Assembly: GCA_965649825.1 (NCBI GenBank) | Contig: OZ287705.1 | Span: 892,314 to 956,313, forward strand | From: Penicillus capitatus | Taxonomy: Eukaryota; Plantae; Chlorophyta | Direction of reading: 5' to 3' | DNA: 64,000 nucleotides | In this document: positions 1,675 to 59,649 of the stretch, one piece after another | How positions within the stretch are numbered: the first letter of the stretch is position 1 | How the letters are laid out: each line of letters starts with the position of its first letter | Program-made: the position numbers and the translations under genes | The notes under the pieces: model-generated | Seen by the model: only the letters and a program-made list of their open reading frames with translations | Database searches by the model: none | Told to the model about the DNA's origin: nothing

Positions 1675-4600
1675 ATGGTTAAGCAAATATGGCGAAAGAA
1701 GCGAAGACTGCCTCACACCGAAGGTCGTCCTTGAGTATGCAGAATTGGCCAAAGTCTTCCATGCGTCCGAACAAGATGCGGACTTTCTGAGGGAGTTGGT
1801 GTATGCCCTCGCTTCTCGAATCCGTCCAGGCGAATTTCTTAACGAGAACGTCGCAAAGGCTCTTTTAAACGCACTCACCTGGGTGGATGCGACCGTCTAC
1901 GATGACCCCGCACAGCTGATTGTCCTTGCCAAAAAACTACTGTTTAGTTTGTCCTCAGATCTAAGACTAACGAAGCACAACTTTGCAAAATACGAAGCGA
2001 ACTTTCTCGCACTCCATCATGTCTTTCTCCTCTTGCATAGCATCGGTCGTGGATATTTGCTTGAGGAAGAGAAAAAAGAGCTCCGCCGAGTAGTTGCACA
2101 AAAGAAAGAAGAGATGAAGCTATCCATTGCGTATTATCCTGTCTTCTTCCACTTCGAGCTTATACAACAAGCTGTTGAGCGGTTAGAAATCGAAAACGCT
2201 CCTTCTCGCTCGGCGCAAGTAACAAGATATGCCGCCTCTGGACTTTATGGTGGAATGCATGTCTTCCACTTTCTCAGAAAACTGGCAGGCGGTGACATCG
2301 ATCCTACATCTGTCGAGGACGCGTATAGAAAAGGTCGAGCAGCAATTGCCAATTTGGGAGTACTGGAGCATGAGTGGTATGACATACTTCAAATTCTAAC
2401 AGCTGCAAGGCTTAGCGCGCTGAAAGAAGAGAAAAAGTGCGAACTTCTTGCACTAGCGTACAACGTGACGATTGAAGGACAACGCAAAACGAGAAGAGCG
2501 AACGACCAGAAAACCTTGAGATTTGGCATCGTCCATGAAATGCGGCTTCTGCAAGTGACAGGGACTCTAATCAAGATAGCCGCAAAGAAGCGAGGACAAA
2601 GCTAGTTGAACTGGCAACAAATCAAGCAATTTCCGAGAACTGGATTCACGATGCAGATGTCCTTACCGAGATTTTAGACTCCTTGCACATTATTCACACA
2701 ATGAATGAAGGAAACCAAGACATCGCTGAAGCTCTTCAAAAGATACAACAATCATGCGATGAATGTGCCAAAGGGACGTTAAAAATTTGGCTAGATGGAA
2801 ATGATATGGAAGAGAAGCTTCAGATGCAACGCCGTGAAGACACGAATAAACAGCAAGAAGATTTGTTCGCCAAGACAGGTGCAACCGTTGGATTTCTGCA
2901 TCCATTTACTATTAGTTCCAACATCAAAGATCTCAAGGAAACATATCTACGCGATAACTTTGCTACGGTGAGTGCATGTGGTATTGTTTCGATTAAACAG
3001 AATTCGTACGTTTGTTGAAGGTGCCTTCCTTGTTTGAATCAGAAGTGCACAGACACGTGAAAGATATGGAACATCATGTTGTTGTGTACGAGGAAATAGT
3101 CGAGAACAAAAGACTTGAAAAAAAAGGAGAAAGGAGTAAAGAAGGAGAAGGAACGGAAGTGGGAAGTTCAACGCTTCAGGAAAGAGACGATCTAAGAGAC
3201 TTCTGCGAACAAAAGAGAAAGATCGCAACGCCCATTTCCATAGAAGACTTGTTTAAACCAAGATCGTCGAAGGCGGCTGTCGGCAGGAGCGATATCCGAA
3301 GAGTGCTGCTTTACGGAAATCCTGGTTCGGGGAAGACCTGCATCTCCAAAGCTATTGCACATAGATGGGCACTGGGAGAGATGTTGCAAGAGTTCGAAGC
3401 CATCTACATGATTCCAATAAGAAGAGTAAATATCACAAAAGCCAAAGGGGTACGGGGAGAGGCGCTGAGAGAAGTAGTCGCGAGTATATGTTTCGATCGA
3501 AAAGGAAGTGATGCCGAATTTGAAGAGTTGAAGACTCAAGTCAACGATGATCTTCATATGTCTAGTACATTGCTCATGCTAGACGGATTGGACGAAGCCG
3601 ATGAAGATGCCAGAGAACTCCTTCATGAGGCGGAGATGGGCGAATGCAGACTTCTGATATTGACACGACCATACAACCTTCAAGGGCTACAAAAAAAGGT
3701 CGACTGCCAGTTTGAATGCCTTGGATTCAATGACCAGCAGCTAAGAAACTACATAAACAAAGAACTACAACAAGATGAGGCTTCGAGACTTGTTCGTTCT
3801 TTGCATCAAGACCGAGGGATGTGGGAAACCGCACACCTTCCGGTAATGGCGCACATTCTCTGTTCTTTGTCGAGAGAACACGGTATCGCCATTGAACATC
3901 AGAGAAAAAGGGCGAGCATGTTTCAGATCTACGGCGACATGGCAAATTTTGTATGGAAGAGGTTCAAGGAAAAGCCCGAAAGAGGAATGGTCAACAAGGA
4001 TATGGTCTTCGGCGATCTAGAAAAGATCGCTTTCGAGGCACTTCGGAATGGACAAATATTAATCGAAGAACGGATCGTCGAAGAACACGCAACATCCACG
4101 AACACGACAAAAATCTTTAAGGAAAGTGGATTCCTTCTATTCGTTTTGGAGGGACAACACTATCAATTTCCACATCTTACCTTTCAAGAATATTTTGCCG
4201 GGAGGTTTATTTCCAGAAGCTTAATGATTAAACAATCAAGAGAAGAAAGACAAGTACTGCAGTTCATTCAAGAAGGAAAATACGTTCAGAAGTACGACTT
4301 GTCAATACACTTCGCAGCGAACGCACTTGCAAGGTGCACTGAAGAGAATGCTTTGCATAAAATGCTCTCGATTATTAACGACCAACCCATTGAAGTTCTT
4401 GGCGTACAACACTTTTTATTAAAAATGAGAGTTCTGGAGGCAATCCTGGAAGGCACAAATCAAGAAGATCTGGAAGACTTTTTAAGCAACGAAAAAGCAA
4501 CCAAGCTCGCTGAAGGTGCTCGGCAACTCCTCGAGCGCACCATTGACGATGTTCTAATCTGTGAAATCGTAATTGGAGAGTTCCAACATTTTTCTTGCAT

Positions 4601-4809
4601 TTTGGAGAATTTTCCGCGGATTCTCAATCAAACCATTGACGAAGTAAAAAGATTGGTAGCACATTCGCAGCAGTTAACATGGATGAAGATGGCCAAGATT
4701 ACAAACGCCTTAAAGCTCGCAAAGCACTCCTCCAAGCACAGTGACGAAATGATTCAATTCGTCTTGAAGTTAGCCGACAAAGTCGATAGTTGGTGCGATC
4801 CAATGGAGG

Positions 4810-6270
4810 GCATAAGGAGACTTGAGTCCATTGCAACACACGTGCCGCAGCACGCCGGCATGATTCTGTCGATGCTTGCGAGTTGGTGCGACAACGAAGA
4901 CACAGTTGTGCGTCGAGCAGCAATAGAAGCGGTTGGCCGCGTCGTCGCGACGGCGCCACAACACGCCGGCGATGTTCTGCCAACACTTTTGAACAGGTGC
5001 AGCGACGAAAGCTGGTCAGTGTGTCCATCGGCGATGGAAACCATCGGCCGCGTCATCGCGGCAGCTCCGCAGCACGCCGGCGAGGTTCTGCCAACGCTGG
5101 CGAGGTTCTGTGGCCACGAATATCCGGACGTGCGTCAAGCAGCGATGGAAGCCATCGGCCGCGTCGTCGCGGCGGCTCCGCAGCACGCCGGCGAGCTTTT
5201 GCCGACGCTGGAGAGTTGGTGCAGCGACGAACGCGGATCAATGGTGCGTCGAGCGGCAATTGAAGCCATTGCCAACGTCGTCGCGGAGGCGCCTCAACAC
5301 GCCGGCAAGTTTCTACCGATGCTGGAGAGTTGGTGTAGCGACGAAGACTCGGTCGTGCGTTGGACGGCGATGGAAGGCATCGACCGCGTCGTCTCTGCTG
5401 CGCCTTGGCACGCCGACAAGGTTCTGCCTACGTTTTTGAGTTGGTGCAGCGACGAAGACTCAGTTATACGAACAACGGGAATTGAATCAATCGAAGACGT
5501 CGTCGCGCAGGCAACGAATTACGCCGGCGATGTTCTGCCTATATTGGCGAAGACATGCGACGACGAAGACACAGTTGTGCGTCGGGATGCGACCGAGGCC
5601 ATCGGACGGGTGGTCGCGGCAGCTCCGCAACACGCTGGCGAGCTTCTGCATGTGCTTGCGAAGAGGTGCAGTGAAGATCATCGTATCGTGCGTCGGGCGG
5701 CGATTGAGGCCGTCGGTCGTATCGCCGCTGCAGCGCCGCAGCACGCCGGTGAGATACTGCCAGCGCTTGCTAAGGGGTGTAGCGACGAAGACGAGGACGT
5801 ATATCGGGCGGCGATCGAGGCCGTCGGCCGCGTCGTCGCGGCGGCGCCGAGGCACGCCGGAGAGGTTCTGCCGATGCTTGTTAGTTGGTGTTGCGATGAA
5901 GACTCAGCCGTGCGTCAGACGGCGATCGAGGCCGTCGGTCGCGTCGTCGCGGCGGCGCCGAGGCACGCCGGAGAGGTTCTGCCGATGCTTGTTAGTTGGT
6001 GTTGCGATGAAGACTCAGTCGTGCGTCAGACGGCAATCGAGGCTGTCGGTCGCGGCGCCGAGGAGGCGCCACGACAAGCTGGCGAGGTTCTGTCAATGCT
6101 TGGCAGTTGGTGCGGCGATGAAAGCTCAGTCGTGCGTCGGGCTGCGACGGAGGCTGTTGGCCGTGTCATCGAGGTCGTGCCGCAGTATGCCGGCGAGCTC
6201 CTGCAGACGTTGGCAAAAAACTGCAGCGACAAAGAATTGAGCGTGCGCAATGCCGCAAGAACGGCGATAA
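4810..6270 (+). repeat. 111-bp coding tandem repeats (HEAT-like), ~13 units
   Basis: Units start at 5811, 5922 and 6033 (111-bp period). Units 5811-5921 and 5922-6032 are nearly identical in DNA. Confidence 0.9.
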
Positions 6271-8229
6271 AAAACGTAAAACCTGAAAAGCTTGTACATT
6301 CTTCAATATCGTTTCTACCTACTTATAAAGGGGGGATTCTATTCTTATTTGTTCAAAACTCGATCACAGTGGATCCCTTTACGAAATCTGAAGCTGTTGT
6401 TCCCCTTGTTTTACATACAACTTCTTCTCAAGAAATTGGAAAACAAGATCGGTATTGTATTGATCGATACGTTGAGTTTTTGAAACAGGAGTTCGAGGAA
6501 ACATTTCCTAGGCTGTTAAATGAGCTTGGTATGTCAGAATTGATACAACCTCCATCCAGATATTCACAAAAGCTTAAATGGTGGAAAAGATCGCGCATTT
6601 AATTTTTTGTTACATTCGTTGAGAAGTTTCAATGATGTGCCTACGTTAAGCCCTGTGAAAGCACGTAAAGTGGATATCATTATTCAGGCTACGTTTTCCA
6701 AACTTTTGACTCGTTTTGCGTGAATCAGTTCTTTAAGGCATCGCGTTTAAACTATAGTGTACTGGAGCATTTCACGACAATTGTGAAAGCGACCGATTAC
6801 AGCGTTTGCGATCCACTACTAATCCTCGAATAGCCTTACCGTCAAAAGTCTTGATGAATACACAAGTAACATTGTCCACACACTGTGAACGGCGCGAGAT
6901 GAGACAGATGGGACCGAGGGAACCAGAAGCATCCAGAACCTTCTAATACGCTTTAAATCGACGTTGATAGATTGATACACGCATTTGAGTTTTGTTGACT
7001 CTCGAACATTCCAGGCTTTGTAAAGGATTCATACACATTGCCATTTCGTGTTCAAACGTGTTTACGCGAGCTGATGGGCTACGCCAACACCGACATGCAG
7101 CACATGATGAAAAAACCTCAAAAGAACTTTTCCAACGAAAAATGCTTCGAAGTACTGGTCGACAAACAACAAAATACTAAGAAGACTAACTCAATGCACT
7201 ATGAAAACATGCATTTAAAGAAATAAGAGAAAACTGTGACCAATAAAGAGAAAAAGTGTAAAACGAAAAAACCAGTTCTAAAGAATACCAACTAATAAAA
7301 GTGCACACAAAATACGATTAAACTTTAGTAAATCTCTCAATTTGGATGCGTGCCAGACATGCAGATGTGAGTCGCCTGCCGAGCCACCGGAGACTGTTGG
7401 GTCGGCGAAGAACCACCCTGGCGTGTTGACCATCGCTCGCGACGGGTGTCCGACTCCGACCTAACTGTTAAATAACCATCGGGCGATGGATACGGACTAA
7501 GGCTTGAAGTTCGCAGCCGTTATTACTTAAGGTCAGGCAATCTCCAACCGTCGCGAGTATTTAACGGCGACAGCATCCTGTAATTAATCTCGTATTCTAT
7601 GGTGCCAAGTCCGAGCGTTCGTTGTCGTCGTGTTCGCGCGTCTTTCGACTCCGAGTTCTGGAAAGTGTTTACACTATCCCGACAGACAATGATCCAACAA
7701 ACCCCGCATGTTGTGTTTCACTGAATCATCGGATCTTGTTGTTCTTATCGTAGTTGGAATGATGAATGTATTACAAACGATGAAAAGTTGAGGTTTTTTT
7801 GTAAACGCAAGGATACTACGTTTGTCAAAAGGACAGGGCCGTTACATCGTGACTGTCTTGTTGTCCAAGGGTTCTGTCTCTGAAGGGGCGCTTACATGAG
7901 GTTTACGTCAACCCGTGGGTCCTTTCCCGCATGGTCCTTGATAGACCGGTGACTCATCTGTCATGTCACCTCTGGCATACAAATACACGAACGTAGTCCC
8001 ATGTATACCTTTTGCTCTGTATGCTTGAAGTCTTCCGCTGTGTAGTCTCTTTAGCGTGGCAATTCCGCGTGACAACAACGTTAGAACATGCGTCACCATT
8101 TAAAGTCATGATGGAACCCCATCCCTTTCAGTCCATATTCACCTTCTACAGATCTCCTCCTACGCCTTGAAAACAGATAAAGCATATAGAAACATAATTA
8201 TCAATGCTCTCGTAACTAAAAATTGATTC

Positions 8230-51603: not shown

Positions 51604-51922
51604 GGAATGTCGAACTTAATGATCACCAATGTTCGTAACGTCGTTAATGGATCGTCAGTAGTAACTGGCGTTTTCGCTCAAGGCGCGCCACGACAACGAC
51701 GGCAACTGAGTCAATCGCTTTTTACTCTTGTCGCACGAAGAGGCAAAGAAAGACGATCGTTTTTGACGTGCCCCCACTCACAACACCGCACTTGCATACC
51801 GAGGTTGGCCGATCTGTTGACAGCCAGACGGAATCTCTTCGCTGGAACGACAGTGGCGATCGGAGAGCGGTGGTTTGTACATAGAAAGCGTTCGCTAAAC
51901 GGATCATCGGACTGAGTATTGG

Positions 51923-54900
51923 ATGTATCGTCCAAGACGTGGCCGTAGACCTTTGACACGACAAGCACTGCCGCCATCATCGGCAGAGGAGCATCCGAAA
52001 GGACATTCGATTGACGAAGGTGAACGAACGATATCGTCCGCCGAAAAGCAGTGGGCAGAAGACATATCGTCACAGCGCAAGCGCATGCACGATGTTCGAG
52101 TGGATATTTCCCAAGGACAGGAATCTAAAGGCCGTGATGGACACCATTGTCCTTCCGAGACGCACTCTCGTTTGGAAGCATCCAATTTCCGGCCACCCAA
52201 AGCGCACGGTCCACCCCAAAAGACAACAGTCCGTCCAGTGCTGCTCTCTTGTGTGCTGTATGCTTGGTGTGTAGGGGGAAGAGAGTCGTCGCAAGAGATC
52301 GAGATATGAAAAGACAGCATCCCAGCGTCCGTTGAGAGATGCTCCATCTGATCCTTCGATGACACTCAGTGATTATCTGCCTGAGGACATTGTTAAGCAG
52401 TATCTGTCTCTGGGCAAGAGCCAAGCGTTGTTTGGTTGGCAAGCGGAATGCCTAAGATCACCTGGTGTGCTCGATGGCAAGAGTATTGTTTACTGTGCAC
52501 CCACCAGTGCTGGAAAGAGTCTGGTGGCTGAGATTCTGATGCTTCGAAGATTATCGTCGACATCGAGTGTTGGCATGTTGGTGCTGCCATTTGTGGCTCT
52601 CTGTTCTGAGAAGGCCAATCAACTGGAATCCTTGCTGGTCCCTCTACAGAAGAAGATTCGTCGCTTCTACGGTTCAAAGAACAGTCCTGTCATTTTCAAA
52701 CGCGACACTGGCATTCTTGTCTGTACAATTGAGAAGGCCAATATCTTGATCAACCGCATGATGGAAGAGAACATTCTGGATCGGCTGGGAATTGTCGTCG
52801 TGGATGAGTTGCACATGGTGGACGATCCTTATCGAGGCTATCTTCTTGAGCTGATGCTCACAAAGCTTCGTTACATGTCCCTCAGAGGGACGCCTGCTGA
52901 TGGAAACCTGCAGATTGTGGGAATGAGTGCAACGATGCCGAATGGTCATGAAGTGGCACAGTGGCTGGGCGCTGAGCTCTACATTACAGATGTTCGACCA
53001 GTGCCTCTCAGACTGTTTCTCAAAGTGGGGACATCTGTGTTGGATGTGACGGGAACAGAGGTACGGCAGCTGGAGCCGCCAGCCGATTGGACAGGAGATC
53101 CGGATCATGTGGCTTGGTTGACAAAGGAAACGGTGGATCAAGGGCATTCTGTTCTTATTTTCTGCTGCAGCAAGAAGGCCTGTGTGATTTGTGCCGAACA
53201 AATCTCTAAACTCATGACCATTCCGGTGCGTGACGTGAAGGGCAGTCGAAGACGGTCGTCACTGACCCGCGAATTGGGCCATGCTTTGGGAGAGCATCAG
53301 CAAAAACTGTTGGAGCTTATTCCGCAGGGAATCGCATTTCATCACGCTGGATTATCATCTGAAGAGCGTCAGTTGGTGGAGAAGGCCTATCGAAGTGGTG
53401 CGATCTCTGTTTTGACGGCAACGTCGACATTGGCTGCTGGTGTCAATCTCCCGGCAAGACGCGTTATATTCCGAGAACCCTACGTTGGTCTGACCACAAA
53501 TGTACTGGATCCCACAAGCTTTCGCCAAATGGCAGGGCGTGCCGGTAAGCTAAGGGCATACATCCCTCTTTGACACTGGATTTCAAATGCCTTTGGCGTA
53601 GGGCGTGCCGGAATCGATGATGAAGGTGAAGCCTATCTGCTGGAATCGAAGTATGTCAAGACTGAGATACTTCAGAATCTCATTAAACGCGATGCGGACC
53701 CTGTTTCCAGCTGCTTGAGCAAAGAAAAGAATGGCATGATCCGTTTGTTACATGAAGTACCCTCATCGACGATAGATCCATGCACATTGATCTCAGAATT
53801 CCGGTATAGGTCATTTCGACAGGGGCTGTGAAGACTGGCAGTGATGTGGAGCGACTCATTCAAAGCACGCTTTTGGCTCAGACACCCGGCAATGCAGAGA
53901 TCGTATCATCTACGGCAAATGACGGCTTGACCTGGCTCAGCAATCACAAACTGATTATGTGGCATCCAGCTCATTCAGGAGCACCTGGTGTCTGGATATG
54001 CCGTTCCCTCAGCAAAGCCATTACCGCTTCAGGAATGGATCCACGTGAATGTGCCCTTGTCAAGAAAGATCTTCTAAAAGCACAGGAACATTTGATCTTG
54101 GCTACCGATCTGCATCTCGCATACTTGACAACACCGCATACCGTTGAGCTGTCTGTTGACTGGGAGAAACTCTATTACTTAATCAGCAGACTCACTGTGC
54201 TGGATACCACTGTGACAGAATTGGTGGGTGTGGACATGCTCTTCCTTCAGAGGAAGTGTCAAGGGAGTCAGTGTTCAGGAAGTCAGGAGAGAGAACGCAT
54301 TGGTCGACGATTCTATGCTGCTCTTATTCTTAGAGACATCGTCAGTGAAACGCCTCTACCCAAGATCTGCCAGAATTTCAATCTCTCCTTGAGCGCTGTC
54401 GAAGATTTGAGAGAACGATCTCTGCGTTATGCGAACATGTCTGCCATCTTCTGTGGTGTTCTTAGATGGGCATATCTGCACGTCCTGATCGAAGAGTTCC
54501 AAAAACGGATCTATCGTGGGGCACGGCCTGAGATTATTCAGTTGACAGAGATTCCTTATGTGAAGGCTCATCGTGCTCGACTTCTGTATGAAGCTGGATT
54601 CCGCAGCATTGAAGAAATCGCAGAGCTGCATTCGGTCGATAAACTGGTAAAGACATTGACAGCGGAGCAAGGTGTGGATGGTCGCCAAGAAGGTTTGGAG
54701 TTGCAGATCGCTCGAAGGATCATCAAAGGAGCTCAGTCCATTGTAATGAAGCGCACGGAAGTTGCCGCGATTGAAGAAGACATTGTCGCCGAAACGGAGA
54801 GCCTTTATGACGGCAGTTGTGCCGATGAGATCACAGAGTCATTTCCTGAAGACATGGACTCCTCCTCTCATCAACTCCCGACGCACGAGCTTCATCATTC

Positions 54901-56993
54901 TGTTCCAGAAATGGAGCTCTCTGCCAGTCTGCGTCGCCTATCCGTGAAGCCATCGAAACCTGACTGGATCTCTGAGGGAATTGCAATTTTGAGTTCCGTT
55001 GCAGAGATGCAATCGCTCGTTCAGTATGTGTTGTCGGCAGATGTCTGTCACATCTCTTTCCAATCACATTTCTCAGATTCCTGTCAGGAAGTGCCATCTT
55101 ACCTCGCGGGCGTAGCTCTGTGCTTCTCCGACATGTCGGTTACTTATGTGGCCCTGTCGGATGAGGCACCTGAGATTCTGTGCTGTCTGGTGGATGTCAT
55201 GCAGAAAGCAGAGATGCAGAAAACGACCTTTGGCCTCGGAGACAGCATGCATTGGATTAAAGGACTGCTACAGCGATCTGCTCTTGCAGCTTTTCCTTCT
55301 GTGATCGATGTCCAGGAAGCTGCAAAGTATCTGGAAGGTCAATCCTCTGCAACAAACGACCTGGAAGGTCTGTTTCAACTTTTTCAACTCGAAGAGGAGT
55401 ATCAGTCGATCAAAGAATTCTATGCCAACGCATCAGAGGGTCTCCCGAATCGATTTGTCCTACGTTCCTGCTGCTCTGCGGCAGCTCTGACGCGAAAGCT
55501 GTGGATTGTTCTGCAAGAAAAGCTACAGAGAGAGGGTCTATTGGATGTCTTCCAAGACATCCAAATGCCGCATGCGCAGATTTCAGAGACTCTCAGTCAG
55601 AATGGTCTCTTTCTCGACAGAAAAAGAACAATGCAACAACTCGCTTTGATCGATGAAATACAATCCGATCTCCAAAGCATGAGCACATCCATCGCTGGGA
55701 CTGTCTTTGATTTCAGTAACAGCGATCAGATAGTCGAGAACCTCGTTGATGTGCTGAAACTGAATCACCCAATGGAAGTTGTGAACAGCCAAGATAAAGA
55801 GATTGCTCTTAGGGCACTGCAAGATCAGCATCCACTTCCGGCCATCATTCTGCAGTTGAAGAGATGGTCAGTCCTTCGTGAGAGTCTCTCTTTTGCCCTC
55901 AATGAGTTGCCACAAGAACAGAACAGGTGACATCTCCCTGATGATGTCCATGTGTGACGCTGAGCTTTGCATTGCAGTGTTTGGTTAAGAGCTGATCTTT
56001 TTGAACGTACGGTTCAGAGTTGGGAAGAGAAGGAAAAGGAATTCTTGCAAAGCCTGCCTTTGCACCGAGTGGATCGGTCAGCCGACGGAAGCCTACTGAT
56101 GTCTCCCCTGGAGGCCCAGCATCAGAATACAGCCGTCATTTGCCACTGTCTTGAGCATTACGATGGGTCATTTCACACATCATGATCTGTTCACCCGTGA
56201 GGACGGTGGATGTAGGAAGGAAAGAGTGATCGCAACATATCAGCATTTGGATGTGTGGTTATTAGCACACTTCAGTCAAGACCGGGCACTTATCAATGCA
56301 CTTATTCAAGAAGGGATCGATCCATTCAGGGCAATCGCTGGTGCCATAAGTCGAAAGCCACTTCATGAAGCACGCACAGTAGGCTGACAGAAACGCCTTC
56401 TTGAAAGGGCAGGTGAAAACTCTGCTTCATGCATTTGCAGACTTCACAGTCGACAGCCGATTACTTTGAGCGCTTTCTCGCCGGCTTCCTCTGCGGCGCC
56501 AGTTCACTTCTCAGTGCATATATCCTTCGAGTCGGTGAAAAACGAGCTCAGGAATGCTACAGGGAGTTCTCAGCTTTCTTTACAGGTATCATATATATTA
56601 GTGACATAACAGAGCAATAGATGCGTTTCTCTTGCATTAGGTGTGGAATCCTGGATTCAACGAATGGTTGAGTGCACAAAGCAGGGATTGTCTATACGGA
56701 CACTGTTTGGCCGAGGCTTGAAGATCAAAGAAGGAAGCGATATCGAGAGATGCTCAGTGCGATGGGCGATTCAAGGATCTCTCGATGAAATCCTCAAGCG
56801 CGCGACAATTCAACTGCATCAGCGTGGAGCTTCATCTGATCAATGGGATCTCCTATTCCGACACCATCACGGTTTTCTGCTCGAGATCCCACAGTCGCAG
56901 CGAGAGATGGCTGAGAAGGCGATTCAGGAGATCATGTATGATGTGACGTCTCTACCTTATCCCGTTCAAGTATGCATCACACCGACAAGGTAG
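51923..56993 (+). CDS. POLQ: DNA polymerase theta/TEBICHI-like: intact SF2 helicase + degenerate family-A polymerase domain
   Basis: APTSAGKSLVAE, VVVDELHMV, GMSATM, AFHHAGL, TSTLAAGVNLPA, QMAGRAG. C-terminal LLAHFSQD and AIQGS but no catalytic Asp residues. Confidence 0.8.
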
Positions 56994-57030
56994 AAGGAGT
57001 ACTCCGCACGTCACATCACTTGTAGCTTCA

Positions 57031-59649
57031 ATGGTAAAGGCATACTTGCGTTACCGTCATGACATCGCGTTCGGCATCGTCGCCTCACATGGCAACGCTC
57101 TTTACGATTCGACGGGGGAATTCTTTGTCACTGCGTCGTTGGAGGGAGTCGCGGTTTGGAAATCGCGAACTGGAGAGCGCATCGCCCTTCTTCTGGACGA
57201 AGAGGCGACTTCGGCGCAACGTCCCATCGAAGTCAAGACGCTTGCACGTTCGAGGCAAGAACACTTGACCGCGGCGGGTTACTCCGATGGGTCCATTCGG
57301 ATCTGGGATCTGAGTACCTATCAGATGCGAACGTCCTTCCATGGACACAAACGACCCGTGAGTCGTCTCTGCTTCTCAGCTTCTGGGGAGCTTCTGGCTT
57401 CCGGTTCACAAGATACGCAAATCTGTCTCTGGGATGTGATTGGAGAAACGGGCCTTTTCAAGCTACAAGGCCATGGTCACGAGATCACAGGTCTCTGTTT
57501 CTTGAAAGATCGTCAGCTGCTTGTATCTGTCGCCAAAGATGGGCAACTGAAGTTATGGGATTTGACGTCTCAGCATTGCTGCCAGACAGTGCTGCATGAC
57601 AAGGGTGTCATCTGGTCTCTTGCTCTGCATCCTCGTCAGTGTCATGTAGTGATCGGATCTGTGGATGCCTCACTCATCGTTTATGAGCTCAAAGAGGGAG
57701 AGATGCCATCTCTTGATGTACGGATGAAGATGCAGCGCCGAGAAGAGAACCGTGTTCGCTCTTTAGCGTTTTCGGAGAATGGAGAGTATCTCGTCTGTCA
57801 AGGGAATACAACGAGTGCGGAGATCTTTGAGGTATTGACGGAAGAGGTCGCTCGACAGAGATATGAAGAACGGCGCCAAAAGGCAGAGAAGGTCCTCCGC
57901 GAACTTGAACGTAAGAGAGCCAAGGAGGGATCCCTGAACAAGAAACTCGACAAGAAGCAGCGCAAAAATGAAAAGATCTTACAGGAGAGGCTGCAAGATG
58001 TCGTTCTCTATCAGAGTCTAACAATTTATCAGGCCTCCAGCAAGCTGCTCTCTATCGATTTCCGGCCAGGAATGCGTTGTGAATTGGGAATCGCGCTAAG
58101 TTCCAATGCCTTTGAAATGGTCGGCTTTGAGCATTCATCAAACAACAGGAAGGTTTTGGAATACACCCAGAGATTGGAGGTTTACCGCGAAGGGCATCGA
58201 TCAAGCATTCGATCCCTATGTCTCTCTTCAGACAATCAGTTCTTGTTGTCCCTCAGCGAAAAAGAAGCGAAGATCTGGAACACAGAAACTGCGTTCTGTG
58301 TCCATACGCTTTCCTCTGGTTACGGTCTTTCGGGGATCTTTGCTCCAGGAGACAGCGTTGTTGTCGTGGGGACCAAGAGTGGGGCATTGGAGCTCTTCGA
58401 TCTCTTGTCAAGCACCAAGATCGAGTCTGTCCCTGCACATGAAGGTCCGGTGTGGTCCATAACGCCTATCAAAGATGACAAAGGTTTTGTGAGCGGTGGA
58501 GCCGACGGCGCCATCAAAGTTTGGAATTGGGGATTGACGACAGGAGAGGGAGATGAGATCAAACGTGTGACCATCCAGGAAAATGAACAGTCTTTGAGAT
58601 TAGATACCGATGTTCTGTGTGTGGTGCTATCTGCTAATGGCAGATTCTTGGCAGTGGCTTTGCTGGATGCAACGATTCAGATCTACTATGTGGATTCGTT
58701 CCAAATTTTCCTGACACTGTACGGTCACAAACTCCCTGTCCTGTCGATTGACATCTCGGCCGATAGTCAGCTCATTGTGAGCGGCTCAGCCGACAAGAAC
58801 ATCAAGATTTGGGGATTGGATTTTGGAGACTGTCATAAATCCATCTTCGCGCACAAAGATTCTGTCACACAAGTTGCTTTTGTGCACACAACACATTATG
58901 TCATGTCGGTCGGAAAGGATGGTATGCTTAAGTACTGGGATGCCGACAAGTTTGAGCTCCTGCTCGAATTGTCTGGTCATCATGCAGAAGTCTGGTGTCT
59001 TTCTATGAGCCACGAGGGCGGCCTTGTCTTCACCGGCTCGAGTGATCGTTCCTTGCGCAAATGGTCGAGAACAGACGAACCTTTCTTCCTGGAATACGAG
59101 AAAGAGAAACGCATGGAGGCACTGTTTGACGAAGACCCCGTCGAGGATTCAGTGCCCCAAGCACAGGGACTTGCCGGAGAGAAATCTCAGACGACTCTCT
59201 CTGCAGCCGATTCTATTCTGGAGGCGCTGGAACTGGCATCGTTTGAAGCCCGGAGAGGAAGTGCCGATCCACCGAACCCATTGCTATGTGGCCTTGAACC
59301 CGCTGCTTTTGTTCTGCAGGCGGTGCAAAAAATCAAACCCAGTGATCTGGAGGTGGCCCTTCTGTCTCTTCCCTTTACGGATGCCCTGCAGCTGCTCACA
59401 TATTTGGCGGATTGGCTCAAAAAAAGGTGCAGTCAGACAGAGGTCATTTGCCGTGTCCTTCTGCATCTCCTGCGACTCCATTACCGTCCATTATCCACCA
59501 GTCTGCATGTCCGATCTCTTCTGCAGAATCTCCAGTCGTCACTGCGGATAGTTATTGGTGAAATGAAAGATACAGTTGGGTTCAATCTCGAGGCGGTGCG
59601 GTACATCCGCAGCCTGACCCAGAATGATGAAAAGACAGCTGCGTTGTGA
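57031..59649 (+). CDS. UTP12: U3 snoRNP WD-repeat protein UTP12/DIP2/WDR3, intronless
   Basis: Starts MVKAYLRYRHDIAFGI; LYGHKLPVLSIDISADS, WGLDFGDCHKSIFAH; C-terminal Utp12 domain ending VGFN. Confidence 0.95.
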   Translation: MVKAYLRYRHDIAFGIVASHGNALYDSTGEFFVTASLEGVAVWKSRTGERIALLLDEEATSAQRPIEVKTLARSRQEHLTAAGYSDGSIRIWDLSTYQMRTSFHGHKRPVSRLCFSASGELLASGSQDTQICLWDVIGETGLFKLQGHGHEITGLCFLKDRQLLVSVAKDGQLKLWDLTSQHCCQTVLHDKGVIWSLALHPRQCHVVIGSVDASLIVYELKEGEMPSLDVRMKMQRREENRVRSLAFSENGEYLVCQGNTTSAEIFEVLTEEVARQRYEERRQKAEKVLRELERKRAKEGSLNKKLDKKQRKNEKILQERLQDVVLYQSLTIYQASSKLLSIDFRPGMRCELGIALSSNAFEMVGFEHSSNNRKVLEYTQRLEVYREGHRSSIRSLCLSSDNQFLLSLSEKEAKIWNTETAFCVHTLSSGYGLSGIFAPGDSVVVVGTKSGALELFDLLSSTKIESVPAHEGPVWSITPIKDDKGFVSGGADGAIKVWNWGLTTGEGDEIKRVTIQENEQSLRLDTDVLCVVLSANGRFLAVALLDATIQIYYVDSFQIFLTLYGHKLPVLSIDISADSQLIVSGSADKNIKIWGLDFGDCHKSIFAHKDSVTQVAFVHTTHYVMSVGKDGMLKYWDADKFELLLELSGHHAEVWCLSMSHEGGLVFTGSSDRSLRKWSRTDEPFFLEYEKEKRMEALFDEDPVEDSVPQAQGLAGEKSQTTLSAADSILEALELASFEARRGSADPPNPLLCGLEPAAFVLQAVQKIKPSDLEVALLSLPFTDALQLLTYLADWLKKRCSQTEVICRVLLHLLRLHYRPLSTSLHVRSLLQNLQSSLRIVIGEMKDTVGFNLEAVRYIRSLTQNDEKTAAL

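What the first reader, a model, noticed from the sequence alone, without database searches (positions are those of the whole stretch)
56221..56993. POLQ-like protein whose polymerase has lost both catalytic aspartates
Seen: motif A reads VIATYQHLDVWLLAHFSQD (Thr codon ACA at 56235-56237) where POLQ has AADYSQLELRILAH. Motif C reads FRHHHGFLLE (56862-56873) where POLQ has LHDELLYE. Motif B is also degenerate. All helicase motifs are intact and the domain is still in open, spliceable frames. Known: these acidic residues are essential in family-A polymerases, and Pol theta performs microhomology-mediated end joining. Inference: a helicase plus pseudo-polymerase, either a neofunctionalised paralog or a lineage with altered TMEJ.
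Basis: partly seen in the sequence, partly recalled or inferred. Interest (0 to 1): 0.7.

Follow-up and report, generated by a model that had tools for sequence, protein, structure and literature searches.

The report
Polymerase-dead POLQ in a green alga
A green alga carries a Pol theta (POLQ) gene whose helicase half looks fully working while its DNA-polymerase half has lost every residue needed to make DNA; that half is still kept under strong selection in at least three related species, so it probably has a job other than DNA synthesis.

Summary
An eight-exon gene on the + strand (51923-56993, 1568 aa) encodes a POLQ-type protein. It has an intact Hel308/Mus308-type helicase (E 1e-143 to human Pol theta helicase), a short linker, an exo-like domain and a family-A polymerase fold (Pfam DNA_pol_A E 6e-27; model TM 0.72-0.76 to Pol theta and Klenow).

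The polymerase active site is dismantled. The motif A Asp is Thr (56235-56237). Motif C HDE is HHG (within 56862-56873). The motif B Arg, Lys and Tyr are gone. Motif 1 (TGR) and the C-terminal tail are missing.

This is not decay. A sister species (87% nt) and a distant relative (47% aa) keep the same exons, the same splice sites and open frames, and both lack the carboxylates. dN/dS is 0.18 for the polymerase-like domain and 0.10 for the three exons in the finding. The helicase diverges at the normal POLQ rate; the polymerase-like half diverges faster.

The organism is a chlorophyte; its nearest named relatives are Caulerpa and Bryopsis. I read the gene as an active helicase/annealing motor with a non-catalytic, probably DNA-binding, pseudo-polymerase. 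I could not test whether the genome also holds an intact POLQ.

The parts
51923..52237 (+). Exon 1: start codon and a basic, low-complexity N-terminal extension (105 aa)
   Evidence: This is the first ATG of the frame and is conserved in L001. The ATG at 52359 is not conserved in L001, so the start must lie upstream.
52238..52274 (+). Intron 1 (37 nt, GT..AG)
   Evidence: L001 has a 1-nt indel here, and the frame is kept only by splicing.
52275..53544 (+). Exon 2: helicase core (RecA1/RecA2) with Walker A 52497-52520, DExH 52797-52814, SAT 52920-52943, and the start of motif VI
   Evidence: Pfam DEAD and Helicase_C. E 1.1e-143 to the human Pol theta helicase-like domain 5A9F/5AGA, with all motifs aligned.
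53602..53756 (+). Exon 3: the rest of motif VI (GRAGRAGID..GE) and the start of the winged helix
   Evidence: Splicing restores QMAGRAGRAGIDDEGE. The junction is conserved in L001 and L003.
53810..55926 (+). Exon 4 (706 aa): winged helix, ratchet (POLQ_helical), HhH/DUF7898, ~60-aa linker, exonuclease-like domain (no DxE), thumb
   Evidence: Pfam HTH_61, POLQ_helical, DUF7898 and the start of DNA_pol_A. The AF2 model and Foldseek match cover the exo-like and thumb regions.
55978..56166 (+). Exon 5: remnant of motif 1 (TGR lost; 'EKEKEFLQSLP' in place of 'TGRLSS.EPNLQNIP') and an insert-2-like segment
   Evidence: MAFFT against intact POLQ and Pol I. This is the lowest-confidence part of the model, pLDDT 27-47.
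56167..56215 (+). Intron 5 (49 nt). Its position settles the exon model.
   Evidence: It is 50 nt in L001 and 46 nt in L003, at the same phase-2 Gly codon. The alternative 43-nt intron at 56077-56119 is rejected.
56216..56378 (+). Exon 6: ex-motif A, VIATYQHLDVWLLAHFSQD (56226-56282). The catalytic Asp is Thr at 56235-56237.
   Evidence: This is the best-conserved 15-mer of the C-terminal half between the window and L003, at 73%.
56441..56585 (+). Exon 7: ex-motif B / O-helix, ADYFERFLAGFLCGASS (56456-56506). The Arg, Lys and Tyr are lost.
   Evidence: The segment is 60% conserved against L003.
56641..56993 (+). Exon 8: 'ERCSVRWAIQGSLDE' (56745-56804); ex-motif C LLFRHHHGFLLE (56850-56885, HHHG at 56862-56873); truncated C-terminus; stop codon at 56991-56993
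   Evidence: dN/dS of exons 6-8 is 0.096.

Best explanation
This is a functional nuclear gene of a chlorophyte green alga. It encodes a POLQ-family (Mus308/TEBICHI-type) protein in which only the helicase half is still an enzyme.

Shown:
- The N-terminal Hel308-type SF2 domain keeps every ATPase/helicase motif and diverges at the normal POLQ rate.
- The C-terminal half keeps the exo-like plus thumb/palm/fingers fold of a family-A polymerase.
- That half has lost both metal-binding carboxylate positions, the O-helix Arg/Lys/Tyr that hold the incoming dNTP, motif 1 and the C-terminal tail.
- This state is old (shared across about 47% aa divergence) and under purifying selection.

Inferred:
- The protein cannot polymerise DNA.
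- It acts as an ATP-driven ssDNA translocase/annealing motor, as the Pol theta helicase domain and HELQ do (RPA/RAD51 removal, pairing of microhomologies).
- The pseudo-polymerase serves as a non-catalytic DNA-end or primer-template binding and positioning module.
- Any fill-in synthesis is done by another polymerase.

The former active-site strands and O-helix are the best-conserved parts of the dead domain, so the old pocket probably still binds something, most simply a 3' DNA end.
For: Gene model:
- Eight exons, seven GT..AG introns, an open 1568-aa frame.
- In the sister species L001 (86.7% nt) every splice site is kept. Exon indels are multiples of 3; intron lengths change by non-multiples (57>58, 51>60, 49>50, 55>62). 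Introns are 65-81% identical against 83-90% for exons.
- L003, a distant relative (47% aa overall), has a complete 1527-aa ortholog. All six of its introns sit at positions shared with the window; it lacks only the window's 5'-most 37-nt intron.

Domains: Pfam DEAD, Helicase_C, HTH_61, POLQ_helical, DUF7898 and DNA_pol_A in both the window and L003.

Helicase: E 1e-143 to human Pol theta helicase with motifs intact. It is 42-45% identical to Viridiplantae POLQ helicases, the same as those are to each other.

Polymerase loss:
- Motif A D->T (window, L001, L002) or D->R (L003).
- Motif C QVHDE -> RHHHG (window, L001, L002) or EHNGS (L003).
- Motif B R..AK -> D/E..ER.
- TGR absent and the C-terminal tail absent.

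Fold kept: AF2 pTM 0.71, with palm/fingers pLDDT 80-91. Foldseek top hits are human Pol theta polymerase domain, Klenow and Bacillus fragment, TM 0.72-0.76 over ~600 residues.

Selection: dN/dS is 0.12 for the helicase, 0.18 for the polymerase-like domain and 0.096 for the last three exons (bootstrap 0.056-0.157; Fisher p 1e-23 against neutrality).

Domain-specific acceleration: the polymerase-like half scores 86-96 bits and 22-28% identity to intact POLQs, which score 190-324 bits to each other. Helicase core identity to L003 is 64% against 33% for the polymerase-like domain.

Ex-motif A (73%) and the O-helix (60%) are among the best-conserved C-terminal segments between the window and L003.
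Against: - There is no transcript or protein evidence; the exon model rests on comparative genomics only.
- No biochemical test was done. Lack of polymerase activity is inferred from the roles of these residues in family-A polymerases (Klenow D705/D882/E883, R754/K758/Y766; human Pol theta D2330, D2540/E2541), which I cite from knowledge.
- DNA binding by the dead domain is inferred, not shown.
- The AF2 model has only moderate confidence (mean pLDDT 67), and the alignment behind it was shallow.
- Selection was measured on one close species pair.
- It is unknown whether the same genome has a second, intact POLQ, which bears on what the protein is for.
Confidence: 0.75

Rival explanations
1. 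The polymerase-like exons are a decaying, neutrally evolving tail or pseudogene remnant, and only the helicase part is expressed and functional.
For: The polymerase-like half diverges much faster than the helicase: 33% against 64% identity to L003, and about one third of the bit score that intact POLQs give each other. Catalytic motifs are lost wholesale.
Against: dN/dS is 0.18 for the domain and 0.096 for the last three exons, p 1e-23 against neutrality. There are no stops or frameshifts in three species. All splice sites and intron phases are conserved across about 47% aa divergence. Pfam still scores the whole domain at E 1e-26 to 1e-27 in both lineages.
Confidence: 0.03
2. The gene model is wrong: alternative or missed exons, or RNA editing, supply canonical motif A, B and C residues, and the real protein is an active Pol theta.
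For: No transcript data were available. One junction had two in-frame solutions.
Against: Introns are only 37-62 nt (41-46 nt in L003), too small to hide exons. The stop codon lies 37 nt before the next gene's ATG. The same substituted motifs sit in the same exons in L001, L002 and L003 and are under purifying selection. The ambiguous junction is settled by a 1-nt indel in L001 and by L003. No other ORF in 46000-57200 carries DYSQ or HDE motifs.
Confidence: 0.03
3. The domain is still catalytic through a non-canonical site, either a re-wired polymerase or a new activity (for example a His-based nuclease or lyase). The HHH cluster, or the conserved Trp/His/Glu-Arg replacements, would form this new active or ligand-binding site.
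For: The former active-site segments are the most conserved parts of the dead domain. Clade-specific replacements are conserved across the clade (Y-x-H-L-[DE]-x-W, E-R-F-L). dN/dS is lowest there, at 0.096.
Against: The His cluster is not conserved: RHHHG in the window against EHNGS in L003. No acidic residue replaces the lost carboxylates at either position. The dNTP-binding Arg, Lys and Tyr, and motif 1, are all gone. Core strands and helices are often the best conserved for purely structural reasons.
Confidence: 0.07
4. It is a neofunctionalised paralog: the same genome also has a standard, catalytically intact POLQ that carries out TMEJ, and this copy has specialised as a HELQ-like helicase with a vestigial polymerase domain.
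For: Intact chlorophyte POLQ polymerase domains exist (P0182). No Caulerpa or Bryopsis protein appears among the 120 best helicase hits, although their WDR3 is 47-52% identical to the window's. So this gene may not be the universal POLQ ortholog of that group. Viridiplantae lack HELQ (PMC5472330), which leaves a niche.
Against: The helicase domain is exactly as distant from other Viridiplantae POLQ helicases (42-45%) as they are from each other, as expected for an ortholog rather than a fast-evolving duplicate. No second copy was seen, but only 64 kb plus three ~20-kb loci could be read. This rival concerns origin only and is compatible with the main mechanism.
Confidence: 0.4

Closest known systems
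DNA polymerase theta (POLQ / Drosophila Mus308 / Arabidopsis TEBICHI / Chlamydomonas POLQ)
   Same: Same architecture and order of domains: Hel308-type helicase with POLQ_helical and HhH, a linker, an inactive exo-like domain, then a family-A polymerase fold. An extra segment sits between motif 1 and motif A, where POLQ has insert 2. The best sequence and structure matches are Pol theta.
   Different: All polymerase catalytic and dNTP-binding residues are lost, motif 1 is missing and the C-terminus is truncated. The linker is very short (~60 aa) and the protein is only 1568 aa. The polymerase-like half evolves about twice as fast relative to the helicase as in intact POLQs.
HELQ / archaeal Hel308
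   Same: What remains enzymatically (a Hel308-type ssDNA-dependent ATPase/helicase) is what HELQ is. Green plants and algae lack HELQ (PMC5472330), so the protein may work like one.
   Different: HELQ has no polymerase-fold domain. The helicase here groups by similarity with POLQ helicases (43-45% to TEBICHI and algal POLQ) and not with Hel308 (E 1e-60 against 1e-143 for POLQ).
Split POLQ of kinetoplastids and other lineages (helicase-only and polymerase-only genes)
   Same: Another way in which evolution has uncoupled the POLQ helicase from polymerase activity (a UniRef entry named 'helicase domain only'; split POLQ noted in PMC5472330).
   Different: In those lineages the polymerase survives as a separate active gene. 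Here the polymerase stays fused but is dead.
C-terminal inactivated polymerase-exonuclease module of DNA polymerase epsilon (family B), cited from knowledge and not tested here
   Same: A polymerase fold that lost its catalytic residues and is retained for a structural or assembly role: a pseudo-polymerase under selection.
   Different: It belongs to a different polymerase family, sits next to an active polymerase in the same protein, and has a known scaffold role in the replisome.

Membership tests
POLQ / Mus308 family (helicase-polymerase fusion) | N-terminal Hel308-type SF2 helicase-like domain with Walker A, DExH, SAT and motif VI, plus winged helix, ratchet and HhH | tested here: met
   Pfam DEAD, Helicase_C, HTH_61, POLQ_helical and DUF7898. 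E 1.1e-143 to human Pol theta helicase 5A9F with all motifs aligned.
POLQ / Mus308 family (helicase-polymerase fusion) | C-terminal family-A polymerase fold preceded by an inactive 3'-5' exonuclease-like domain | tested here: met
   Pfam DNA_pol_A E 5.8e-27. Human Pol theta polymerase domain E 1.3e-19. AF2 model plus Foldseek, TM 0.72-0.76 to Pol theta, Klenow and Bacillus fragment. The exo-like region has no DxE motif (and the sequence itself).
POLQ / Mus308 family (helicase-polymerase fusion) | Both domains in one polypeptide | tested here: met
   A single open spliced frame, with all splice sites and phases conserved in L001, L002 and L003. This is comparative evidence only; there is no transcript.
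POLQ / Mus308 family (helicase-polymerase fusion) | Six conserved polymerase motifs with key catalytic residues intact (the criterion used in PMC5472330 for POLN/POLQ calls) | tested here: not met
   Motif A Asp is Thr or Arg; motif C Asp-Glu is His-Gly or Gly-Ser; the motif B Arg, Lys and Tyr are lost; motif 1 TGR is absent.
POLQ / Mus308 family (helicase-polymerase fusion) | POLQ-specific insertion loops in the polymerase domain (inserts 1-3) | tested here: inconclusive
   A segment of POLQ-like length lies between ex-motif 1 and ex-motif A, where insert 2 sits, but it has no sequence similarity. No long insert 1 or insert 3 is present.
POLQ / Mus308 family (helicase-polymerase fusion) | DNA polymerase / theta-mediated end-joining activity | not testable with these tools
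   Requires primer-extension and end-joining assays.
HELQ / Hel308 | Helicase-only protein without a polymerase-fold domain | tested here: not met
   A ~600-aa exo-like plus polymerase fold is present and under selection.
Catalytically active family-A DNA polymerases | Two metal-binding carboxylate positions (motif A Asp, motif C Asp/Glu) and the O-helix Arg/Lys/Tyr | tested here: not met
   In contrast, nearly all of the 146 nearest library representatives keep them.
Pseudoenzyme (dead-enzyme domain retained by selection) | Fold retained, catalytic residues lost, purifying selection on the dead domain | tested here: met
   Fold. Residue loss. dN/dS 0.10-0.18 with conserved exon structure in three species.

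The most novel reading that the evidence does not exclude
This is the only POLQ of a clade of ulvophyte-like green algae. In that lineage Pol theta has become a helicase with a non-catalytic polymerase-fold DNA clamp. Theta-mediated end joining would then either run with a different polymerase doing the synthesis or have been replaced. The dead domain, with its ex-active site the most conserved part, would reveal a selectable, synthesis-independent function of the Pol theta polymerase domain, such as 3'-end capture or synapsis.
Probability: 0.3. Interest if true: 0.75.

Novelty: new variant of a known kind. Interest (0 to 1): 0.6.

Why it matters
Pol theta is defined by its polymerase, and polymerase-dead alleles made in the laboratory abolish theta-mediated end joining. 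A natural POLQ that has lost catalysis but keeps the whole polymerase fold under strong purifying selection is a natural separation-of-function allele. It argues that the polymerase domain has a role that does not need DNA synthesis, such as DNA-end binding, synapsis, or positioning of the helicase.

It also offers a sequence set for finding which surfaces serve that role. The result bears on how green algae repair breaks and integrate foreign DNA; in Chlamydomonas both depend on POLQ (PMC8495919). I found no report of a polymerase-dead POLQ in the literature searches, nor in a 2023 survey of family-A polymerase subfamilies. That is absence from what I could search, not proof of novelty.

Tried and rejected
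- **Alternative exon model.** A model with a 43-nt intron at 56077-56119 is in frame. I rejected it because 56167-56215 carries a 1-nt length difference in L001, and because L003 splices at the same phase-2 Gly codon.
- **Start codon at 52359.** It is not conserved in L001, so I replaced it with ATG 51923 plus a 37-nt intron.
- **More clade members.** The word-based protein search and the exhaustive phmmer against 1.84 billion representatives found only three species. Two scans of JGI metagenome contigs found nothing: one with peptide patterns from the clade alignment, one with a degenerate DNA pattern for HL[DE]xWLLxHFSQD.
- **A fourth relative by synteny.** The WDR3-bearing contig L004 has no POLQ-like gene upstream.
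- **Naming the samples.** A literature search for the four run and assembly accessions found nothing.
- **Rfam scan of the window.** No matches, so no rRNA to name the organism.
- **Algal 'helicase-only POLQ' entries.** I considered whether these (Auxenochlorella POLQ1, Astrephomene, Scenedesmus) show a general loss of the polymerase in green algae. I rejected this as evidence: at least one is marked partial, and a chlorophyte-type POLQ with an intact polymerase exists (P0182).
- **A His-cluster metal site in motif C.** Not conserved in L003.
Full report
**What is in the sequence.** The window is eukaryotic nuclear DNA, about 49% G+C, gene-dense, with very short GT..AG introns. Three-frame translation of 46000-57200 shows a helicase ORF, a 706-aa ORF and several short ORFs. 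Together these read as a POLQ-type protein once six obvious introns are removed.

Comparison with a sister species adds an upstream exon and a 37-nt intron. The final model has exons 51923-52237, 52275-53544, 53602-53756, 53810-55926, 55978-56166, 56216-56378, 56441-56585 and 56641-56993. It gives 1568 aa; all seven introns are GT..AG and 37-62 nt long.

**The observation.** Pfam finds DEAD, Helicase_C, HTH_61, POLQ_helical, DUF7898 and DNA_pol_A. The last scores E 5.8e-27 and covers profile positions 12-371 of 381.

- **Motif A.** phmmer against PDB puts the human Pol theta polymerase domain first (E 1.3e-19). It aligns 'IATYQHLDVWLLAHFSQD' with 'aADYSQLELRILAHLSHD'.
- **Motif C.** The last exon aligns without gaps to Bacillus Pol I: 'LLFRHHHGFLLEIP' against 'LLLQVHDELILEAP'. 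So Asp becomes His and Glu becomes Gly, at 56862-56873.
- **Further losses.** I aligned the domain with intact eukaryotic POLQs (a chlorophyte-type P0182, a plant TEBICHI P0233, and three others) and three bacterial Pol I. Motif 1 (T-x-T-G-R-L-S) is absent. The Arg of D-Y-S-Q-x-E-L-R is Trp. The O-helix R-x-x-A-K...Y-G reads D-Y-F-E-R...C-G. The Asn of 'ERQAxN..QGSAAD' is Arg. The last ~10 residues are missing.
- **Helicase.** The helicase half matches the human Pol theta helicase-like domain at E 1.1e-143. Walker A, DExH, SAT and motif VI are all in place.

**Is it a real, functioning gene?** Two protein searches found only three related sequences in public data. I fetched their contigs.

- **L002** (ENA) is 99% identical in DNA and is the same species.
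- **L001** (ENA) is 86.7% identical, a sister species.
- **L003** (a Logan assembly) is distant: 64% aa in the helicase core and 33% in the polymerase-like domain.

All three have the WDR3/Utp12 gene immediately downstream.

In L001 every splice site is conserved. Exon length differences are multiples of three, while intron lengths change by 1, 9, 1 and 7 nt. Introns are 65-81% identical against 83-90% for exons.

In L003 I could build a complete 1527-aa ortholog with six introns of 41-46 nt, at the same positions and phases as in the window. It has the same Pfam architecture. This also decides between two in-frame solutions for one junction, in favour of the 49-nt intron at 56167-56215.

**Selection.** Nei-Gojobori dN/dS between the window and L001:

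| Region | dN/dS |
|---|---|
| Whole gene | 0.15 |
| Helicase | 0.12 |
| Exo-like domain | 0.13 |
| Polymerase-like domain | 0.18 |
| The three exons in the finding (56216-56990) | 0.096 (bootstrap 95% 0.056-0.157) |

For those three exons the Fisher test against pN = pS gives 1e-23. The tiny introns, and the 37 nt between the stop codon and the next gene's ATG, leave no room for alternative exons.

**Is the dead state shared?** L001 and L002 have the same Thr and HHHG. L003 has 'LIEARYLHLELWLLLHFSQD' (Asp becomes Arg), 'EYMERFLQSFFNGAGS', and 'LVYEHNGSFVIEV' (no acidic residue, and the motif C His is also gone). So the carboxylates were lost before these lineages split, and the positions have drifted since.

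Among the 146 nearest representatives from the exhaustive search, almost all keep the motif A Asp and motif C HD[ED]. The few exceptions are unrelated bacterial-type proteins.

**Fold and rate.**
- An AlphaFold2 model of the C-terminal 607 aa has moderate confidence: mean pLDDT 67 and pTM 0.71. Palm and fingers reach 80-91; the ex-motif 1/insert region is 27-47.
- Foldseek places it on human Pol theta polymerase domain, Klenow and Bacillus fragment, at TM 0.72-0.76 over the whole exo-like plus polymerase fold.
- The helicase is 42-45% identical to green-algal and plant POLQ helicases, the same as those are to each other.
- The polymerase-like half gives only 86-96 bits (22-28% identity) to intact POLQ polymerase domains, which give each other 190-324 bits.
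- The acceleration is therefore specific to the dead domain. Even so, within the clade the best-conserved 15-mer of the whole C-terminal half is the former motif A (73% between the window and L003). The former O-helix is also high, at 60%.

**Organism.** The downstream WDR3/Utp12 protein is closest to Caulerpa lentillifera (52%, a EukProt entry) and Bryopsis sp. (47%). Land plants, Chara and other chlorophytes follow at 39-51%. A one-helix LHC-like (Chloroa_b-bind) gene lies head to head with the POLQ-like gene at 51229-51603 on the minus strand. The window therefore comes from a chlorophyte green alga, probably near the siphonous ulvophytes, with no close named relative in the databases I could query. 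This placement rests on one marker.

**How it most likely works.**

Shown: an intact Hel308-type ATPase, a retained polymerase fold, loss of every residue known to be needed for nucleotidyl transfer in family-A polymerases, and purifying selection on the dead domain.

From established knowledge:
- The motif A and C carboxylates bind the two catalytic metals.
- The O-helix Arg and Lys hold the dNTP phosphates.
- Mutation of the equivalent residues (human D2330, D2540/E2541) gives polymerase-dead Pol theta.
- The Pol theta helicase domain and HELQ translocate on ssDNA, displace RPA/RAD51 and anneal complementary strands.

Inferred: the protein cannot synthesise DNA. It works as a helicase/annealing motor whose C-terminal pseudo-polymerase binds or positions a DNA end or primer-template. 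Another polymerase does any fill-in.

Green plants and algae lack HELQ (PMC5472330), so a HELQ-like role is plausible. Chlamydomonas POLQ is needed for random integration and for most Cas9-induced editing outcomes (PMC8495919), which shows what is at stake if this lineage's only POLQ is polymerase-dead.

**What stays open.** I could not search the rest of the genome, so I cannot say whether an intact POLQ coexists with this gene.

- For orthology: the normal divergence rate of the helicase.
- For a clade-restricted or paralogous gene: no Caulerpa or Bryopsis protein appears among the 120 best helicase hits.

There are no expression data. Literature searches, and a 2023 reclassification of family-A polymerases into 19 subfamilies, gave no report of a polymerase-dead POLQ.

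**Verdict.** The finding is real. It is a functional POLQ-family gene with a thoroughly inactivated but selected polymerase domain, conserved in at least three algal species. It is a new variant of a known kind and of good interest to DNA-repair biology. The limits are the obscure host, the lack of expression data, and the untested question of a second intact copy.

Noticed in passing
window 51229-51603 (-): A 124-aa ORF with the signature 'FGFVDNAERLNSRAAMIGFIGILIVEL'. It matches Pfam Chloroa_b-bind just above the cutoff (23.7 against 22.3 bits), so it is a one-helix LHC-like (OHP/HLIP-type) protein. It is transcribed divergently from the POLQ-like gene, with about 320 nt between the two start codons, which suggests a shared bidirectional promoter. 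The stretch 51400-51900 is well conserved in L001.
   Followed up: partly
window 56993-57031: Only 37 nt separate the POLQ-like stop codon from the ATG of an intronless 872-aa WDR3/Utp12 gene (57031-59649). This adjacency is kept in L001, L002 and L003. The intergenic spacing is extremely tight, and the UTRs may overlap.
   Followed up: no
window 3012-6602 (+): A single 1196-aa ORF combines an N-terminal NACHT NTPase domain with a long run of HEAT repeats. This is an NLR/STAND-like architecture in a green alga.
   Followed up: no
window 52238-56640; L003 11484-14472: Introns are unusually short and uniform: 37-62 nt in the window and 41-46 nt in L003. The 5'-most intron (52238-52274) is absent in L003, where the N-terminus and helicase core form one ORF.
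   Followed up: partly
window 56477-56479 (codon of ...FLCGAS...): The residue at the second motif B Tyr position varies: Cys in the window and L002, Tyr in L001, Asn in L003. This fits loss of the dNTP-stacking role at that site while its neighbours stay conserved.
   Followed up: partly
proteins P0161 (845 aa) and P0267 (685 aa): Two unrelated bacterial-type family-A polymerases among the nearest library representatives also have degenerate catalytic motifs. P0161 reads 'CATYPHIELR' with no TGR motif. P0267 reads 'TAYSHPIMR' and 'AHNE'. Natural inactivation of PolA domains may recur.
   Followed up: partly
proteins P0024, P0025, P0030: Several green-algal POLQ entries (Astrephomene, marked partial; Scenedesmus; Auxenochlorella 'POLQ1', 965 aa) end just after the helicase domain. 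They may be truncated gene models or real helicase/polymerase splits; I did not resolve which.
   Followed up: partly
window 48262-48585 (+) and 44957-46813 (+): Upstream neighbours are a dual-specificity phosphatase exon (motif VHCTAGINRA; DSPc in the syntenic loci) and a 618-aa AAA ATPase. Both are syntenic in L001 and L002 but not in L003.
   Followed up: no
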